Below are positions 9,685 to 18,271 of a stretch of DNA of 18,608 bases, piece after piece. How positions within the stretch are numbered: position 1 is the first letter of the stretch; every line of letters starts with the position of its first letter. The stretch covers positions 1 through 18,608 of the IMG/VR virus record IMGVR_UViG_3300014911_000516; one strand, written 5' to 3'. Below the pieces are notes generated by a model, which made no database searches, was not told the origin of the DNA, and worked only from the letters and a program-made list of their open reading frames with translations. The position numbers and the translations under genes are program-made.

Positions 9685-10056
9685 ATGCCTGGTGTTAAAG
9701 ACTTAAGAGAGCGAGTAGATAAGTACATAGCTAAGACACCAGCCGATCAAACTGGTACAAGATACGGGGCTGTTAAGGACTTGGCTGTAGGAAGGTTTAC
9801 AGCGTATGCTTCAAGCATAGTAGAATTCAGAGAACTAGTAAGGAATGTACTAAATAAAGAAGGCGTTCCAGCCGGACAACAGGGAGTTTACTTTGCATTT
9901 GCTATGAGGCTTCGTAGTAAGGCCTTCAGCCACTCTGGTACTACTCTCAAGGATTACGTGAATGGTATGATACAGGACTTCACCACAGGTAAGGGAGCTG
10001 ATCCCACCATACTGAAGAAAATAGCATCCATGATATTAGGAGAGGTGATAAGCTAA
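9685..10056 (+). CDS. Major capsid protein 1, SIRV2 fold
   Basis: VRNVLNKEGVPAGQQGVYFAFA..SGTTL..NG..ADPTILKKI aligns with recalled SIRV2 P134 (VSAVLTQYGITGPNRAIYQGFG..SGPAL..NG..ANPQVLDAV); basic N-terminal helix. Confidence 0.9.
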   Translation: MPGVKDLRERVDKYIAKTPADQTGTRYGAVKDLAVGRFTAYASSIVEFRELVRNVLNKEGVPAGQQGVYFAFAMRLRSKAFSHSGTTLKDYVNGMIQDFTTGKGADPTILKKIASMILGEVIS

Positions 10057-10072
10057 AGGAGGTGAGTGAGAG

Positions 10073-10447
10073 ATGCCCGGAGTTAAAAGATTTGGTGATA
10101 TGAGAGAGAAATACGAGCTAAAATACGATGGTGCAAACGTAACTGCTAGGTTAACGGCCGTAGAGGAGATAAAGAACAGAAGGTATGAAGCATTCTCTTC
10201 ACCAATCGTCAACATAATCGAAACTGTTAGGACGATACTCGAGAGTAATGGCGTCCCAGCTGGTCAGCATGGTATCTACTATGCCTTTGCTGAAGTGATT
10301 CAAAAATACACCTTCAGCCACTCTGGTGCTACCTTAGACTTACTAATATCTGGAAAGAAGAGTGAATGGGTAACTGCCCACAAGGCCGATCCAGCAATCC
10401 TCGACAAGATTGTATTAGCTATAATAGGAGCATTACCACCTTATTAG
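10073..10447 (+). CDS. Major capsid protein 2, SIRV2 fold
   Basis: Gapless paralog of MCP1 (49/123 identities, hand count); SGATLDLLISGKKSEWVTAHKADPAILDKIV matches the rudiviral MCP C-terminus; GGAGGTGA SD. Confidence 0.92.
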   Translation: MPGVKRFGDMREKYELKYDGANVTARLTAVEEIKNRRYEAFSSPIVNIIETVRTILESNGVPAGQHGIYYAFAEVIQKYTFSHSGATLDLLISGKKSEWVTAHKADPAILDKIVLAIIGALPPY

Positions 10448-10581: not shown

Positions 10582-11628
10582 ATGAGTACTGTAATTGTTA
10601 CATCTCATCGATCTACATCTTTGCAAAAAGTGAGTAATGACATTAAAACGGCATTAGAGAGTAATGGAAGAGAAGTAAAGAATATTCTAGGATTTCCAAG
10701 TGTAAGAAGTTCTGATTATGCAAATTGCAGAAACGTGCTCTTCGTAATGACGTTCGATACTATCTGGGCTAGGCCTTACTTCTGTGCTTACTACTTACTA
10801 AAATCAGATGGATGGAACACAATATTCTACACTACTATCGAGGGAAAACCACTAAGATTCCTAGGAGATGAATGGATATATCGTGAATGTGAGTTCATAG
10901 CTAATTCGAATTATACTAAAAAGAAAATCGCTAAAGAAGGTGGTAGGGTTTTAGACGTAATTCATCATGGAATAGATACCCGTAAATACAGGAATTTAAA
11001 GTTTATGGGTAGAATAATGCGAAGTGAACTAGGTGCTTCAGAAAAGGAATTCATCGTTCTTTATATTGCTGGGGGGTATCGAAGAAAAGGACATGATTTA
11101 TTCAGATCTGTCATCCAGTACGTAGGAAAGAAGGATAATACAATTAAATTTGTAGTAGTGACACAGCCTAATGCAATTCAATATTATGCAGATCTAGAGA
11201 ATTGCATTGTTTCAGATGAATTTGGAAATTTACCAGAAGAAAAGATAATAGGATTATTCCATGCATGTGATCTCTATGCTCAGCCCTCTCTAAGCGAGGG
11301 ATTTGGATTACCAGTCTTGGAAGCACTAGCTTGTGGAAAGGTAGTAGTACATCCAGATTATGAGCCTCTCTCAGAGATAACTACAAAGTCTACAAGCTAT
11401 CGATGTAAGGTAGCTACTGTTTCAGAATGGAGTGGTGAGCGAGAAGAACATACTGGAATCATATATGAATTACACCTTTACGATCCAAATGAGTTTGGTG
11501 ATCTCATCATACAAGCTAAAGATGAATTAATGAAAGAGAGAAAAGAAAAGGAGAGATTATGTCTAAATCGTGCTAAACAATTCGATATGCATAAAACATA
11601 TAAGAAGTTCTTAAAGTATATCCAGTAG
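10582..11628 (+). CDS. GT4 (GT-B fold) glycosyltransferase, like SIRV ORF335
   Basis: RKG, PSLSEGFGLPVLEA (EX7E), FYTTxxGxP, NS, HGI, EFG; directly follows the MCP as in rudiviruses. Confidence 0.93.
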   Translation: MSTVIVTSHRSTSLQKVSNDIKTALESNGREVKNILGFPSVRSSDYANCRNVLFVMTFDTIWARPYFCAYYLLKSDGWNTIFYTTIEGKPLRFLGDEWIYRECEFIANSNYTKKKIAKEGGRVLDVIHHGIDTRKYRNLKFMGRIMRSELGASEKEFIVLYIAGGYRRKGHDLFRSVIQYVGKKDNTIKFVVVTQPNAIQYYADLENCIVSDEFGNLPEEKIIGLFHACDLYAQPSLSEGFGLPVLEALACGKVVVHPDYEPLSEITTKSTSYRCKVATVSEWSGEREEHTGIIYELHLYDPNEFGDLIIQAKDELMKERKEKERLCLNRAKQFDMHKTYKKFLKYIQ

Positions 11629-12360: not shown

Positions 12361-15300
12361 GTGAATATGGATTATCGGGAGAAATTAGAGTTTGAGAATG
12401 TAGATATAGCAGATGTAGAATACTTAATGAAAATGCTTTCAGTAGTTAGTGATAACTCTCTTGACTACCCTATTATGGATGAGATTGATATTACAAAACT
12501 GGATCTAGACGCTCTAGTAGTGTCGGAGTTTGGTATTACGGATATCATAGGACAAATATCCTCATGGTTATATGAAAAGCTTCAAGCATTCTCATCGTGG
12601 ATAACATCAGGAATTGAAACGATAGTTAACGCATTATGGGAGAACTTCATAAAACCAGCTATTAACGTTATAGATGCTGGTGTAGGATGGATTAAAGATC
12701 AGGTATATTCAATATGGGATAGACTACAGAATATTGGTGATATATTAAGTTCCATAGGAGGTACTATAGTTGATATCTTCAATACAGTAAAGGAAGGATT
12801 CATAAATCTAATAAAGGAAATACCATCTGCTGTAGGAAGATTCATAAATAGTGTGAAGGATCTTATAATATCAAAGATTGAAGCGATTCCAGATCTAATC
12901 ATTAATGGAGTGCGATCGTTTATTGATGCTATTTCTTCGGGGATTGACTTTTTGAAGGAAGGATTGCAGAATGTTACAAACTTCCTAGGAAACATAGGAA
13001 TGGCACTATCCAACATATTCTCATCGATAAAAGAAGGTTTTAGTGTACTTAAGGGATATATTGAAGGAGCATTAGCAACATTCAGTAGTAAGATTGCTGG
13101 TGCTATTGATACTGTAAGAACAGCATTTATGGAATCTATGCAAACTGTAGCTACATGGATACAACAGGCATCAGGAGCGATACAAGGCTTCGTAAATGGA
13201 ATATTAAAACTTCCAGAATGGTTTAGGGAGCATTTAGTAGCACCATTAACTGAGGCTATGTCGAAATTCGCCTCATGGATATGGGAGCATCTACCAGAGG
13301 GTATAAGGTCATTCTTTGAGAAGGTAAGAGATGCTATAATAGGATTTTATGAAGGATTTAAGTCATTTATTGCTGATCCTAAGGGATGGTTTATCAGAAA
13401 TGTATGGGAGCCTCTGAAAGAGCGATTAAGGGATATTGGAGAATGGATTTGGGAAAGACTTCCTGAAGGAGTAAAAACATTCTTCGAAAGAGCGAAGGAA
13501 TTCTTTACAGTTGATTTGGTAAACTTCTTTACCAAAACATTACCTGAAAAGATACGCGATCTAGTGGACACTATTAAAACAATTCCTGAAAAGATTAAAG
13601 AGATTCCAGATAAAATAAAGGAGATGGCCGATAATGTAGCAAATCTTCCTGAAATGATAAAGAGTGCTTTTGAAAAGATAGGTGAATGGATTTGGGAAAA
13701 ATTACCAGAAAATATACGTAATTTCATAGATAAAGCTAGAGACTTCATCACAGATGTCTATGATCAGTTTAAGGAGTTCATCAAAGATCCAAAGGGAAAG
13801 TTTTACGATGTACTGAAAGGCGTAGGTGAAAAGATATTAGCAGGTTTGGGTTGGATTTGGGATAAAGTCTTGGATATAGTAACATTCATTAAAGCTAAAG
13901 TAATCGAGGCCTGTAAGACAATATCAACATGGATCTATAGTATTGCAAAAACAATAAGTGAGACGTTTAAGAAGATGTTTATTGAAACATTTATAGTTCC
14001 AATCAAAAACGTAAAATCTACATTCGTAGAACTACTTAAAACAGCTTTTGACGAGGCATTCGCACAAGAGGAAGGCGGTGAATTATGGTTATTATCATCA
14101 TTAATCCCAGAGATCTATAACGTAATGTATCCTATAATAATTATTCCAGTACTCGCTAAAGGCGTGGCTGAAGCTACGGGAGAGCAAGAAGTTTCGGGTA
14201 AGATAGCCGGTCTTGGTGGGGCGATTAAAGTTAAGCTAGGTAAACTGATTGGCGAAGTAGCTGATACGTTAAAAGACTTGGTTTCAAGGACTATAGATGA
14301 GATTGCATTAGGACTTTCATTTAATCTATTCGAGCCTTTACGGTACGCTGTAAGGCCTTTATCGAAACGTCTACTTACACCTATATTTATGAAACAATAC
14401 GGTATAGATGCCTTCTTTGAGGTGCCTTCGTTTAGTGAACTTAGGAAGTTGCTACAAAGGTACTATCCAACTACTAAGGATGAAAAGGAAGATTTTGAAA
14501 AAATGCGGAAATACTTTAGGACAATGCTAGAAATAAGAGGATTACCACAGTCATATATAAATGAAGTAATGAAGACGCTCGAGGAATGGTCTATTGAAAT
14601 CGAAGATCGCTTTACCGAATATACCAAAGTAAAGCGTAAAATCCCGCTTTCGCCACTTTACGAAATGCCTTCGATATCTGAAGTATGTACATTTATGGTA
14701 CGTGATATAATTAAAAAGCCTGAAGATTTCATAAAATGGTTAAATAAGCTTGGCGTCAGTCGTGATATAGCACTATTCAATTATCTATTACACTATCGCT
14801 ATCCTTCTCCTGAGAAAATAGCCGATTTCGTATGGCGAGGTATAGCAGGAGTATTATGGAATCCTGATGCGTCCATGGATACCGAGGTAATGAGCGCTTT
14901 CGAACTTAAGCCTGAAAAGATGAAAGCAGTTGCTCCCAGACAACTCAATTTCGAAGGAAAGACATTATTCGAGATGCTTAAACATTATATGAAGTGGCAT
15001 GATTATGCAAGATTTCCTTGGGCGGCCGGTTGGCCTACCGATAACGCTATCATCACAGATCTCCTAGCTGACATACCCGGCAAAATCGATTTGAGATGGA
15101 TGACCCGATGGGGTATATTCGAATATTGGAGTGCTAAGAAAATTGGATTAGAAACTTCTTTAGAAGAGATTATGCAAAAGTTGCTTCCACCACAAGGTGA
15201 GACTAAAGCCGATGATGTAATACAGTATTTGTATAAACAGCTTACAGAGCCTACTCCACTCTTCGATATCCGGCAATTCTGTAGGACATTACAGGCTACA

Positions 15301-16689
15301 GGATTGCATCCATACTGGATTCCTTGGGTAGGAATTGCAGAATCGATAAATGCTCTTACAGAAGAGAGGACGTTACTAAGAACTGGATTTATGAATCTCT
15401 TTGAAAAAGGCCTATTCAGTTTGAATACATTAAATCAACTATTGGCAGGATTCTTCACAATTAAATTTAAGGTAGGATATTATGACGTGAAGGATTATAA
15501 ATGGAAGTATTCAGATGTAGAAGTACCAGTTGCGTTCCTACCAGCAGAGAGCAAATTACTTGAGCTACGATCGATATTTGATAGGATGTTAGAATTATAC
15601 GCAGAGATATATTCTGAGATCAGGAAATCAATACGTTATGGAATATATGATGTAAAAAGCGCTAAGAAGATATTGCAGAAGATGATCACAGATCTAGCTA
15701 CTTATGGTAGTGGGTTAATAAAAAGCGTTACTGGAAGAAAGTTAACTCCAGAAATCGATGCGGGATACATAGATATATGGACAAACATTGAATCACAAAT
15801 ACAGGATATCGAAAAGAAGATAGCAATACGTAGTGTAGCACAAGGTGTATTAGGGTGGTTATTATACAGGTTAGCTTATGGGTGGGTAACTGAGGAAGAT
15901 TTCAGATCTGTAGTAAACATACTTACAAGCAAATTCTACGTATACAAAGAGTTAGGAGATGCCGTAGTAGAACTAGGTAAGAAGTTAGCCGAAATAATGA
16001 GGAAGCAAGAGCGTGAAGTTTATGTACCTACGCCTTCACAGATTGCGACATTTTCAGAATACATGGATATTCCTGATAATGTGATTAAGGAAGCTTTCAA
16101 GGAGAGGAATATTGTAGAGCCTTGGGCCTCATTCTGGTATAAATACATAACTACTAGAGCTATATCCAGCGAGACCAATACATTAGTGTCTACATTTAGG
16201 AGAATCGTAGAATACTTCGCCGTTCCTAAGGACTTAGTAGATAGTGTAAAGGATCTAATGGTTAAAGGTGGCTGGACCTCCAAAGAAATGCCTATATTCG
16301 ATCTAGATCTCCAGTTACGTAGATTCTACAGGATAATGAGGACGTTTGTGCCTACCATACGTGGTTTCGTAACTGATGCGATGTATATGGATGATTGGGA
16401 GAGCAAGTTGCAAGATTGGCTCACGATACGAGGAATTGACCCAAAGAAATACGAGAAACAGGTGAACTACTATAAGCACTTGATAAAAGCTAGGAAGGCG
16501 TATCGTAGATTCAGCTGGTATCTGACTAGGCTACTAAACGCTTACTGTGCTGGAGTAATTAATGAAACACAAGTAAGACAAAAATTACAAAGATTCAAAC
16601 CTTATGGATTGTCAGATGAAGAGATTGAAATAATAATTGATGGATTCAGAATGGAGAAAGCATATCGTGAAGCAATATATGGATCTTAA
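12361..16689 (+). CDS. Large minor virion/terminal-fibre protein, like SIRV2 ORF1070
   Basis: Long amphipathic helical N-terminal region, then EQEVSGKIAGLGGAIKVKLGKL (recalled ORF1070 EVEIDLAPVGLGGKIPIKFGEI), EP, PSF and RGLP; repeated P[ST] helix-start motifs. Start uncertain (GTG 12361 or ATG 12367). Confidence 0.8.
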   Translation: MNMDYREKLEFENVDIADVEYLMKMLSVVSDNSLDYPIMDEIDITKLDLDALVVSEFGITDIIGQISSWLYEKLQAFSSWITSGIETIVNALWENFIKPAINVIDAGVGWIKDQVYSIWDRLQNIGDILSSIGGTIVDIFNTVKEGFINLIKEIPSAVGRFINSVKDLIISKIEAIPDLIINGVRSFIDAISSGIDFLKEGLQNVTNFLGNIGMALSNIFSSIKEGFSVLKGYIEGALATFSSKIAGAIDTVRTAFMESMQTVATWIQQASGAIQGFVNGILKLPEWFREHLVAPLTEAMSKFASWIWEHLPEGIRSFFEKVRDAIIGFYEGFKSFIADPKGWFIRNVWEPLKERLRDIGEWIWERLPEGVKTFFERAKEFFTVDLVNFFTKTLPEKIRDLVDTIKTIPEKIKEIPDKIKEMADNVANLPEMIKSAFEKIGEWIWEKLPENIRNFIDKARDFITDVYDQFKEFIKDPKGKFYDVLKGVGEKILAGLGWIWDKVLDIVTFIKAKVIEACKTISTWIYSIAKTISETFKKMFIETFIVPIKNVKSTFVELLKTAFDEAFAQEEGGELWLLSSLIPEIYNVMYPIIIIPVLAKGVAEATGEQEVSGKIAGLGGAIKVKLGKLIGEVADTLKDLVSRTIDEIALGLSFNLFEPLRYAVRPLSKRLLTPIFMKQYGIDAFFEVPSFSELRKLLQRYYPTTKDEKEDFEKMRKYFRTMLEIRGLPQSYINEVMKTLEEWSIEIEDRFTEYTKVKRKIPLSPLYEMPSISEVCTFMVRDIIKKPEDFIKWLNKLGVSRDIALFNYLLHYRYPSPEKIADFVWRGIAGVLWNPDASMDTEVMSAFELKPEKMKAVAPRQLNFEGKTLFEMLKHYMKWHDYARFPWAAGWPTDNAIITDLLADIPGKIDLRWMTRWGIFEYWSAKKIGLETSLEEIMQKLLPPQGETKADDVIQYLYKQLTEPTPLFDIRQFCRTLQATGLHPYWIPWVGIAESINALTEERTLLRTGFMNLFEKGLFSLNTLNQLLAGFFTIKFKVGYYDVKDYKWKYSDVEVPVAFLPAESKLLELRSIFDRMLELYAEIYSEIRKSIRYGIYDVKSAKKILQKMITDLATYGSGLIKSVTGRKLTPEIDAGYIDIWTNIESQIQDIEKKIAIRSVAQGVLGWLLYRLAYGWVTEEDFRSVVNILTSKFYVYKELGDAVVELGKKLAEIMRKQEREVYVPTPSQIATFSEYMDIPDNVIKEAFKERNIVEPWASFWYKYITTRAISSETNTLVSTFRRIVEYFAVPKDLVDSVKDLMVKGGWTSKEMPIFDLDLQLRRFYRIMRTFVPTIRGFVTDAMYMDDWESKLQDWLTIRGIDPKKYEKQVNYYKHLIKARKAYRRFSWYLTRLLNAYCAGVINETQVRQKLQRFKPYGLSDEEIEIIIDGFRMEKAYREAIYGS

Positions 16690-16924: not shown

Positions 16925-18271
16925 ATGGTGGGGATGGCACAGAGGGAGGCTCAAAAGCTTCTGGAAGCTAAGCGTAAGTATTTCGAAAAGGCACTTTCAG
17001 ATACGGCCATAGGTATCAACTTCCTTAAATCACTACGAAATATCGATGAGACAAGATTTAGATCAGATATAACGTTATCAGATACACTTTTTTCATCTCT
17101 AATGTCTGTGTATTTTTATGGAATACCATTAAGTGAGACTACACCATGGATTCAAACATTTACACCTGTGCTTCCTGATTTTGAAGAATTGTTACGTGGA
17201 ATTCTAGTTAAGTTTGAAAAATTCGATATTACAATACCGTTTCCTGAATTAACCGACGTAGATGAAACATTACGATTCTTCTTGATAGATGAGGTGGCTA
17301 ACAATATAATCGCTACACGAGGTAAACCGCTAATCGTGGGAGTAACCAAATATGGTGAGGGTTACGTAGATCCTGAAGCTGTTAGGGAGTTCCTACGTTC
17401 TACACTATATGCTTATGCAAAGAAAGACATCTCCCTAACTGAGTTAAGGAATAGGCTTGATAAAGTAGGTAAGACACTAAATATACATCCTTCGTTAATC
17501 GAGGATGCCTTCAATAGGATGATGCTTATAGAAACAATTAAGAAAAAGGCTGCTACTTGGGATTATGCTTGGTGGGACGTAAGTGAATGGGCCGAAGAGG
17601 AAGAAGGTGTAGGAAAAGTTGAGTTCGAAACATACTCTGGAGAAAAGGTTAAGGTAGAGTACGATAATATGCTTGAAGCAGAAGCTGGTGGTTATTGGGA
17701 TTTATCATATTGGGATAATGCATACTGGATAGGAGATGAAGGGTCACAAAAATATCCATATAAATATGATGAGAAAGAACTTAAATCGAATATCGATAAA
17801 GTAAGAGATACAATACTTACAAACTTTATAAGGTGTTATATCTACACAGGTTTAGGTGTAGGAAACTATCAGAGAGCATGGGAGAGGAGAAAGTATTACA
17901 GATCGTCACGAACTGAAACTTATGCTCTACCATTCTCCCATCGGCTTAGGATTGAATCGCTAGTTAGGAACTACGTGCTCTCTAAAGAGCCTGACTGTCC
18001 TCCTTGGAAATTACGATTATACATGTCAGCCATGCTTGAAATCTATGGAAGATTATTTGGAACGCATCGATGGGGTACTGAAATGGAAGTATCGATGAGT
18101 GGAGAGGAGTTCAAGAAATACTGGCTAGATAAGTGGAGTGCTGAAGGCCTAGAGCGTTCAATTCTGGAAGGAATGTATGAGTCGTTTAAAGATGTCATAT
18201 CTGCTTTGGGAACTATTAGACAAATTTCGTATTTGAGATTTATAAGATGGAAATACAGGAGGTATGAATAA
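16925..18271 (+). CDS. Minor virion protein, like SIRV2 ORF488
   Basis: SSRTETYA, SAMLEI and MSGEEFKKYWLDKWSAEGL match recalled ORF488 SSEIENYA, SAIVEI and LSYSDFLNYWKTKWKFYGL; GGAGGTGA SD. Confidence 0.78.
   Translation: MVGMAQREAQKLLEAKRKYFEKALSDTAIGINFLKSLRNIDETRFRSDITLSDTLFSSLMSVYFYGIPLSETTPWIQTFTPVLPDFEELLRGILVKFEKFDITIPFPELTDVDETLRFFLIDEVANNIIATRGKPLIVGVTKYGEGYVDPEAVREFLRSTLYAYAKKDISLTELRNRLDKVGKTLNIHPSLIEDAFNRMMLIETIKKKAATWDYAWWDVSEWAEEEEGVGKVEFETYSGEKVKVEYDNMLEAEAGGYWDLSYWDNAYWIGDEGSQKYPYKYDEKELKSNIDKVRDTILTNFIRCYIYTGLGVGNYQRAWERRKYYRSSRTETYALPFSHRLRIESLVRNYVLSKEPDCPPWKLRLYMSAMLEIYGRLFGTHRWGTEMEVSMSGEEFKKYWLDKWSAEGLERSILEGMYESFKDVISALGTIRQISYLRFIRWKYRRYE

What the first reader, a model, noticed from the sequence alone, without database searches (positions are those of the whole stretch)
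17909..18199. Apparent third capsid-fold domain at the C-terminus of the 448-aa minor virion protein
Seen by eye: residues ~329-425 (..ESLVRNYVLSKEPDCPPWKLRLYMSAMLEIYGRLFGTH..SGEEFKKY..EGLERSILEGM) align in order with MCP1 (..RELVRNVLNKEGVPAGQQGVYFAFAMRLRSKAFSHSGTTLKDY..KGADPTILKKI). Shared elements are LVRN-VL-KE, P, Y, F..H, SGxxxKxY and G....IL. Inference: the ORF488-like protein carries an MCP-derived four-helix bundle that could join the helical lattice to nucleate or cap the filament and anchor the terminal structure.
Basis: inference. Interest (0 to 1): 0.75.

Follow-up and report, generated by a model that had tools for sequence, protein, structure and literature searches.

The report
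Capsid-like domain in minor virion protein
The last third of a conserved minor virion protein of an uncultured rod-shaped archaeal virus is a diverged copy of the virus's own major capsid protein, which suggests (untested) that it caps the filament and links it to the end fibres.

Summary
The 448-aa ORF (16925-18271, +) is a distant homologue of rudiviral ORF488/SIRV2 gp33 (hhalign prob 97.5%, E 8e-12). Its C-terminal module, residues ~329-432, is homologous to the SIRV2-fold major capsid proteins (MCPs) encoded 7 kb upstream.

Four independent routes nevertheless give the same register (E344=R49, Y366=Y69, G408=G104, L414=L110):
- **Direct profile comparison:** P 2e-5, prob 76%; reversed control P 0.47.
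- **Bridging subfamily of ~380-aa proteins:** it aligns end to end with the 448 family (E 2e-19). Its C-terminus matches MCPs at E 1e-7 to 3e-11, and by plain BLASTP at 2e-8 against the MCP of the same virus.
- **AlphaFold model:** the domain model (pLDDT 88) has an AFV1 MCP, 3fbz, as its top PDB hit by Foldseek (TM 0.50, prob 0.84).
- **Sequence search of the PDB:** that same MCP is the only hit below E 0.01 for the bridging profile.

The homologous region may extend upstream to residue ~284, the MCP arm, but this is tentative. That the module joins or caps the capsid lattice is plausible but untested. I found no published description of the link.

The parts
16925..18271 (+). Gene for the 448-aa ORF488-like minor virion protein
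   Evidence: ORF list and translation. 49 homologues at 90% clustering and 191 representatives at 50% clustering. Homology to rudiviral ORF488, annotated 'virion protein' or 'structural protein' in SIRV3, SRV and SMRV1. AF2 model pLDDT 89.3.
17909..18220 (+). MCP-like four-helix bundle, residues 329-432. Predicted helices are 328-354, 360-378, 393-406 and 411-445, with a 14-residue insertion (379-392, includes H381, W383, G384) between helices 2 and 3
   Evidence: hhalign register to MCP1 42-123. Bridging subfamily A4. AF2 secondary structure. Foldseek top hit 3fbz, AFV1 ORF140. Residue-to-nucleotide mapping.
17774..17908 (+). Possible counterpart of the MCP N-terminal DNA-wrapping arm, residues 284-328: helix 289-312, invariant N314-Y315-Q316, basic stretch 321-329. 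Tentative
   Evidence: A4 against the MCP profile aligns the whole MCP (MCP1 residues 3-118) but with low per-column confidence in the arm. BLASTP fragment 284-292 against MCP1 5-13, E 1.7. Greedy hhalign extension. The two routes disagree by about 10 residues in the arm. Invariant columns.
18221..18268 (+). Basic amphipathic C-terminal tail (residues 433-448) that extends the last helix about 20 residues beyond the end of a normal MCP
   Evidence: AF2 helix 411-445. A conserved R/L-rich tail is present in the 448 family but absent from the ~380-aa subfamily.
9685..10056 (+). MCP1 (123 aa), SIRV2-fold major capsid protein
   Evidence: Pfam PF12193, 37.8 bits against a cut-off of 25.2. The A2 profile hits solved rudiviral MCPs 6wq0 and 3j9x at E 1e-13 and 4e-12.
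10073..10447 (+). MCP2 (124 aa), paralogue of MCP1
   Evidence: 41% identity to MCP1, E 1e-30. PF12193, 45.2 bits.
10582..11628 (+). Glycosyltransferase (GT1) of the conserved structural gene module
   Evidence: Pfam PF00534, E 2e-17. The same MCP-GT neighbourhood occurs in rudiviruses and related loci.
12361..16689 (+). 1442-aa coiled-coil protein, homologue of SIRV2 ORF1070 (terminal-fibre protein)
   Evidence: BLASTP to SIRV2 ORF1070: C-terminus E 1e-9, N-terminal region E 1e-7. phrog_7334, E 7e-28.

Best explanation
Shown: the 448-aa protein belongs to the ORF488 family of minor virion proteins of rod-shaped archaeal viruses (realm Adnaviria). Its C-terminal ~100-150 residues are a diverged copy of the SIRV2-fold major capsid protein. 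The four-helix bundle is well supported; an equivalent of the N-terminal arm is possible. Inferred: MCPs of this fold work as dimers that wrap A-form DNA and stack into a helix (ICTV Adnaviria profile, PMC12282232). The MCP-like module therefore most likely occupies an MCP-type position next to genuine MCP1/MCP2 subunits at the end of the nucleoprotein helix. The insertion between helices 2 and 3, the extended basic last helix and the bulky ~280-residue N-terminal part would block further subunit addition. That would cap the filament and give a platform for the ORF1070-like fibre protein encoded next to it.
For: Homology, by independent routes in one register:
- Direct profile-profile comparison: P 0.0016 rising to 2.2e-5, prob 76%, against reversed and shuffled controls.
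- The ~380-aa subfamily A4 (30 clusters) aligns end to end with the 448 family (prob 99.2%, E 1.6e-19).
- C-termini alone, A4 against A1: prob 94.6%, P 6.6e-8.
- A4 C-terminus against MCP profiles: prob 94-97%, E 1.3e-7 to 3e-11.
- L011 381-aa protein against the MCP of its own genome: BLASTP E 2e-8, 29% identity over 98 aa.
- 37 of 143 family representatives are hit at their C-terminus by the MCP HMM.
- An HMM of the A4 C-terminus finds every MCP among 639 local ORFs, including window MCP1 (3e-5) and MCP2 (1e-4).
- The A4 profile against all PDB sequences gives AFV1 ORF140 as the only hit with E below 0.01.
- Foldseek of the window's own C-terminal model puts the same MCP (3fbz) first of 350,542 chains: TM 0.50, prob 0.84, all other hits at or below 0.18.

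Virion role:
- Rudiviral homologues are annotated as virion or structural proteins.
- The gene sits in a conserved MCP-GT-ORF488-like-ORF1070-like module in both subfamilies.

Adaptor principle:
- Related viruses fuse MCP-like domains to other parts, including a NosD/beta-helix protein.
Against: - Nothing here tests lattice insertion, capping, stoichiometry or location in the virion.
- The window protein does not reach any Pfam MCP model.
- The Foldseek E-value is 0.94, and rudiviral MCP structures are not among the 50 hits shown.
- The full-length model finds no MCP.
- Bona fide rudiviral ORF488 profiles show no detectable similarity to MCPs (P 0.2-0.4), so for them the link is only transitive.
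- Arm correspondence in the window protein is low-confidence and differs between routes.
Confidence: 0.6

Rival explanations
1. The homology is real but the role is not in the lattice. The MCP-derived module could act as an assembly factor, for example by binding a free MCP monomer as a pseudo-partner, nucleating the first turn on the DNA terminus, or binding DNA ends. Alternatively it could be only a structural core of the minor protein and never occupy a capsomer position.
For: Sequence divergence from MCPs is extreme (about 17% identity). There is a family-specific insertion and a basic tail. MCP-invariant arm residues K5, K13 and K17 are not visibly retained. The full-length AF2 model is one compact high-pTM object (pTM 0.86), so the bundle may be packed against other domains.
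Against: The residues most conserved in both families (Y, G, L of helices 2 and 4 and the helix 3-4 loop) are retained, which suggests the fold and perhaps its contacts are under shared constraint. Homologues are annotated as virion components.
Confidence: 0.27
2. The protein is incorporated sporadically along the filament body in place of an MCP, as a decoration or anchoring point for other proteins, not specifically at the ends.
For: An MCP-like module could in principle replace a subunit anywhere. Related viruses carry other MCP-domain fusions, such as beta-helix proteins.
Against: The large N-terminal part and the extended last helix would disturb a tightly packed helix. Published helical reconstructions describe capsids built only of MCP dimers (PMC12282232). 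The gene lies beside the terminal-fibre gene.
Confidence: 0.08
3. Chance or convergent resemblance between two alpha-helical bundles, with no common ancestry.
For: Pairwise similarity is marginal. Foldseek E is 0.94. There is no Pfam hit.
Against: The bridging subfamily reaches E 1e-7 to 3e-11, and BLASTP reaches 2e-8. Four routes give the same register. Reversed and shuffled controls are flat. The same AFV1 MCP is the top hit in unbiased sequence and structure searches of the PDB.
Confidence: 0.05

Closest known systems
Rudiviral ORF488 family (SIRV2 gp33/ORF488, SRV ORF464, SIRV3 gp25 'virion protein')
   Same: Homologous over about 240 columns, including the C-terminal module (A1 141-412 against ORF488 200-450; prob 97.5%, E 7.8e-12). 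Similar length, 464-495 aa against 448. It lies in the same gene set as MCP, GT, Hjc and ORF1070.
   Different: Identity is too low for tblastn or PHROGs to detect. The gene is on the same strand, directly after the ORF1070-like gene, not divergently upstream of it. The rudiviral proteins themselves show no detectable MCP similarity.
SIRV2-fold major capsid proteins of Adnaviria (Pfam PF12193 Sulf_coat_C; PDB 3j9x, 6wq0, 3f2e; AFV1 ORF140 3fbz/5w7g)
   Same: Four helices in the same order with matching loop positions. Shared conserved Y, G and L columns. An insertion between helices 2 and 3, as in AFV1 ORF140.
   Different: It is a domain at the end of a 448-aa multidomain protein, not a free ~125-aa subunit. 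It scores below every Pfam threshold. The last helix is about 20 residues longer and has a basic tail. The N-terminal arm is not securely recognisable.
Second, non-virion MCP paralogue of some rudiviruses (SSRV1 ORF108, MRV1 ORF108, 'putative coat protein')
   Same: Another diverged extra copy of the MCP fold in the same virus group. It is also hit by the A4 C-terminal HMM (E 6e-5 and 1e-4).
   Different: Those are free-standing small proteins, reported not to be incorporated into virions (bioRxiv 10.1101/2023.08.24.554615). This one is a domain of a protein whose relatives are virion components.

Membership tests
ORF488 family of rudivirus-type minor virion proteins | Sequence homology to SIRV2 gp33/ORF488 and its orthologues | tested here: met
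   hhalign of A1 against a profile of 9 rudiviral ORF488 proteins: prob 97.5%, E 7.8e-12, 243 columns. Against SIRV3 gp25 alone: prob 95.1%, E 3e-8. The HMM of the window family's C-terminus hits rudiviral ORF488 C-termini at E 2e-5 to 7e-4. Controls with ORF564 and the 649-aa neighbour are negative.
ORF488 family of rudivirus-type minor virion proteins | Encoded within the structural gene set (MCP, glycosyltransferase, ORF1070-type fibre protein) | tested here: met
   Window order is MCP1, MCP2, GT, two small ORFs, ORF1070-like, small ORF, 448-aa. The same set occurs in related loci and in rudiviruses.
ORF488 family of rudivirus-type minor virion proteins | Physical presence in purified virions | not testable with these tools
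   Only the depositors' annotations of homologues are available: 'virion protein' or 'structural protein'.
SIRV2-fold MCP (Pfam PF12193 Sulf_coat_C / PF21660 MCP_C) | Scores above the Pfam gathering threshold | tested here: not met
   No Pfam hit for the 448-aa protein or its residues 320-448 even at E 10. The bridging L011 C-terminus hits only PF12193, at 14 bits against a cut-off of 25.2.
SIRV2-fold MCP (Pfam PF12193 Sulf_coat_C / PF21660 MCP_C) | Detectable common ancestry with MCPs by profile comparison | tested here: met
   Direct: P 2.2e-5, prob 76%. Through subfamily A4: A4-A1 E 1.6e-19, A4-MCP E 1.3e-7 to 3e-11, BLASTP 2e-8. 37 of 143 representatives are hit by the MCP HMM.
SIRV2-fold MCP (Pfam PF12193 Sulf_coat_C / PF21660 MCP_C) | C-terminal four-helix bundle with MCP topology | tested here: inconclusive
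   AF2 predicts four helices in the aligned positions (pLDDT 88-96 there). The Foldseek top PDB hit is AFV1 ORF140: TM 0.50 (normalised to target), rmsd 4.7 A over 104 columns, prob 0.84, but E 0.94, and no other MCP entry appears in the 50 hits shown. No coordinates were available for an explicit superposition.
SIRV2-fold MCP (Pfam PF12193 Sulf_coat_C / PF21660 MCP_C) | N-terminal arm that becomes helical around A-form DNA | tested here: inconclusive
   The A4-MCP alignment spans MCP1 residues 3-118 but with low confidence in the arm. In the window protein a helix (289-312) and a basic stretch precede the bundle, but two alignment routes disagree by about 10 residues.
SIRV2-fold MCP (Pfam PF12193 Sulf_coat_C / PF21660 MCP_C) | Forms dimers that polymerise on DNA into the helical capsid | not testable with these tools
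   No multimer prediction or experiment was available.

The most novel reading that the evidence does not exclude
ORF488-type proteins are conserved in all Rudiviridae examined and in at least 191 50%-identity clusters of uncultured relatives. On this reading they are MCP-derived 'capsomer mimics' that terminate the A-DNA nucleoprotein helix and dock the terminal fibres. That would make them a second ancient structural gene of these viruses beside the MCP. A weak second MCP-like helical hairpin at residues ~141-208 could even make the protein a pseudo-dimer that imitates a whole capsomer.
Probability: 0.2. Interest if true: 0.8.

Novelty: new variant of a known kind. Interest (0 to 1): 0.62.

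Why it matters
The ICTV profile of Adnaviria (PMC12282232) says these viruses share no core gene other than the MCP, and that the structures capping the filaments are made of genus-specific minor proteins. How the helix is started, ended and joined to its fibres is not described in the papers I could read. A minor virion protein that is conserved across Rudiviridae and a large uncultured clade, and that carries a capsid-derived domain, offers a concrete and testable candidate for the cap or adaptor. It also shows that the SIRV2 fold has been reused as a building block in larger proteins, including fusions to a beta-helix domain in related viruses. I found no paper describing this link, but my literature access was limited.

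Tried and rejected
- **BLASTP** of the 448-aa protein against MCP1 and MCP2: only short fragments with E above 0.2.
- **Pfam, PHROGs and tblastn** against 50,697 phage and archaeal-virus records with the 448-aa protein: nothing.
- **A1 profile against PDB sequences:** nothing.
- **Foldseek of the full-length model** against PDB and BFVD: no hit with E below 0.9. The N-terminal ~280 residues therefore have no recognisable structural relative.
- **Rudiviral ORF488 profile against MCP profiles:** not significant.
- **Mixed C-terminal alignment A5 against the PDB:** only spurious ribosomal-protein hits. Used against 1.84 billion representatives, its 150 listed hits were all family members, so free MCPs, if retrieved at all, were not shown.
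- **Search for a second MCP-like module in the N-terminal half:** P 0.008-0.17 with conflicting registers, so not established.
- **Literature searches** for ORF488, P488 or an MCP-like minor protein returned nothing relevant. Two key papers (PMC8274609, PMC7443925) are not held.
- **Domain-swap idea rejected:** I considered that only the ~380-aa subfamily acquired an MCP domain by a swap. This fails because the isolated C-terminus of that subfamily still matches the 448 family at the right place (P 8.7e-6 and 6.6e-8) and shares its family-specific PHR...DE insertion.

Full report
**What the window is.** The 18.6-kb window is IMG/VR contig IMGVR_UViG_3300014911_000516, with about 36% G+C. It carries a rudivirus-like gene set:
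- an RNase-H-fold nuclease, a transglutaminase-like protein, an Hjc resolvase and an FkbM methyltransferase;
- two tandem capsid genes, MCP1 (9685-10056) and MCP2 (10073-10447), 41% identical to each other and both above the Pfam PF12193 threshold;
- a GT1 glycosyltransferase;
- a 1442-aa coiled-coil protein that matches SIRV2 ORF1070 at both ends;
- the 448-aa ORF at 16925-18271.

The MCP profile hits the solved rudiviral capsid proteins 6wq0 and 3j9x at E 1e-13 and 4e-12, and the AFV1 MCPs more weakly. The closest cultured viruses share only 22-25% MCP identity.

**Checking the observation.** The finding's coordinates are residues 329-425, and the quoted motifs are there. As a pairwise match it is marginal:
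- BLASTP does not report the alignment.
- The Smith-Waterman score against MCP1 is reached by 50 of 1000 shuffles, and against MCP2 by 178 of 1000.

I then collected 49 homologues of the 448-aa protein (alignment A1) and 27 MCP homologues (alignment A2). Reversed profiles score 10.9 and 14.4, and none of 200 shuffled MCP profiles exceeds 22.6. With only the C-terminal 169 residues and a 58-sequence MCP profile, the result is P 2.2e-5, prob 76%, with a reversed control at P 0.47.

**The bridge.** A scan of IMG/VR for relatives found locus L011. Its 381-aa protein is a distant member of the same family (prob 97.9%, E 3e-13 against A1). Its C-terminus matches the MCP of its own genome by plain BLASTP: E 2e-8, 29% identity over 98 residues, MCP residues 24-117. 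This protein has about 30 relatives (alignment A4).
- A4 aligns with A1 end to end (347 columns, prob 99.2%, E 1.6e-19).
- A4 aligns with the MCP profile over 107 columns, corresponding to MCP1 residues 3-118 (prob 94.1%, E 1.3e-7).
- C-termini alone: A4 against A1 P 6.6e-8; A4 against the broad MCP profile P 3e-11.
- The isolated 87 C-terminal residues of L011 still find the right place in A1 (P 8.7e-6). This argues against a domain swap confined to that subfamily.
- An HMM of the A4 C-terminus picks out every MCP among 639 local ORFs, including window MCP1 (E 3e-5) and MCP2 (E 1e-4). The HMM of the window family's C-terminus has MCPs as its first non-family hits at E about 0.02.
- A profile of the module finds 191 representatives among 1.84 billion proteins. 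Of the 143 new ones listed, 37 are hit at their C-terminus by the MCP HMM, two of them over nearly the whole MCP.

All routes agree on the register: E344=R49, P359=P62, Y366=Y69, G408=G104, L414=L110. The Y, G and L columns are invariant or nearly so in both families.

**Structure.**
- AlphaFold2 with the family alignment gives a confident full-length model (pLDDT 89.3, pTM 0.86) and a confident model of residues 280-448 (pLDDT 88.4).
- Predicted helices 328-354, 360-378, 393-406 and 411-445 coincide with the four MCP helices in the alignment. There is a 14-residue insertion between helices 2 and 3, and the last helix runs about 20 residues past the MCP end.
- The full-length model has no meaningful neighbour in the PDB or BFVD.
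- The domain model's best PDB neighbour, out of 350,542 chains, is AFV1 ORF140, a lipothrixviral MCP (3fbz). TM is 0.50 normalised to the target, rmsd 4.7 A over 104 columns, and prob 0.72-0.84 for three chains, while every other hit is at or below 0.18. The E-value is only 0.94, and no rudiviral MCP entry appears among the 50 hits shown.
- Independently, the A4 sequence profile searched against all PDB sequences returns that same protein as its only hit below E 0.01 (E 0.0074, bundle residues 53-131). ORF140 also has an insertion between helices 2 and 3.
- I could not obtain coordinates, so there is no explicit superposition and no check of which surfaces of the bundle are exposed.

**Identity of the whole protein.** The A1 profile matches rudiviral ORF488 proteins (SIRV2 gp33 and orthologues from SIRV3, SIRV8, SBRV1, SRV, ARV1, SSRV1, MRV1 and SMRV1) at prob 97.5%, E 7.8e-12 over A1 141-412. 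Neighbouring rudiviral proteins ORF564 and the 649-aa protein do not match. Depositors annotate several of the ORF488 homologues as virion or structural proteins. The rudiviral ORF488 profile itself shows no similarity to MCPs, so for the classical rudiviruses the capsid link is only transitive.

**How it probably works (inference).** MCPs of this fold act as dimers that wrap A-form DNA and stack helically, and the ends are closed by minor proteins (PMC12282232).
- A minor virion protein with one MCP-like module could sit in an MCP position beside genuine subunits at the last turn.
- Its insertion, long basic last helix and large N-terminal part would prevent further growth. It would therefore cap the filament and offer a platform for the ORF1070-type fibre protein encoded next to it.
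- The conserved structural gene module in both subfamilies fits a virion role.
- Other MCP-domain fusions in related viruses show the fold being reused as an attachment module. One is a protein with Pfam NosD/beta-helix hits; another is a 386-aa protein above the PF12193 threshold.
- None of this was tested. A role as assembly nucleator, DNA-end binder or purely internal scaffold remains open.

**Novelty.** I found no paper describing an MCP-like domain in ORF488-type proteins. The papers I could read describe only free MCPs and their paralogues (PMC12282232; bioRxiv 10.1101/2023.08.24.554615). I rate it a new variant of a known kind: a known fold and a known protein family, newly connected.

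Noticed in passing
L011:12373-13530 (+); L025:13764-14390 (+); L023:17057-17611 (+, gene runs off the locus): Relatives with a single MCP encode further proteins with an N-terminal MCP-like domain. One is a 386-aa protein above the PF12193 threshold (32 bits). Another is a 206-aa protein. A third is a 451-aa protein whose recorded Pfam hits are NosD/Beta_helix, typical of fibre or depolymerase proteins. The capsid fold seems to be reused as an attachment module.
   Followed up: partly
window 17345-17548 (residues 141-208 of the 448-aa protein): Weak resemblance of a second helical hairpin to MCP. Smith-Waterman aligns residues 141-182 with MCP1 25-60 (29 of 1000 shuffles reach the score). hhalign gives P 0.17 for A1 and P 0.008 for A4, but in a different register. 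It is not significant. If real, the protein would hold two MCP-like units.
   Followed up: partly
window 17570-17590 and 17693-17713 (residues 216-222 and 257-263): A duplicated tryptophan-rich motif, WWDVSEW and YWDLSYW, lies in a beta-rich segment (residues ~210-270). The segment is conserved across the family and aligned to rudiviral ORF488. No structural relative was found and the function is unknown.
   Followed up: no
window 9685-10447; loci L003-L007, L009 versus L008, L010, L011, L021, L023-L025: The window's clade has two tandem MCP paralogues, both closer to the rudiviral Pfam model than to the lipothrixviral one. The ~380-aa subfamily viruses have one free MCP. Gene order also differs: the ORF488-like gene comes after the ORF1070-like gene in the window and before it in the other subfamily.
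   Followed up: partly
L021 and L022 (IMGVR_UViG_3300013099_000018, 104 kb): The same 21-kb structural region occurs twice, in opposite orientation, on one 104-kb contig. This is far longer than known adnaviral genomes, so it may be an assembly artefact or a concatemer.
   Followed up: no
window 18221-18268 (residues 433-448): A conserved arginine-rich amphipathic tail (family consensus R..RLRF.R.RLR) extends the last helix. It is present in the 448 family and absent from the ~380-aa subfamily. It may be a DNA or membrane contact.
   Followed up: no
P0084, member of the ~380-aa subfamily: One member comes from a bin labelled 'Methanosarcinales archaeon'. Members of the 448 family come from Thermoprotei, Thermofilaceae and Desulfurococcaceae bins. 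The two subfamilies may therefore infect very different archaea.
   Followed up: no
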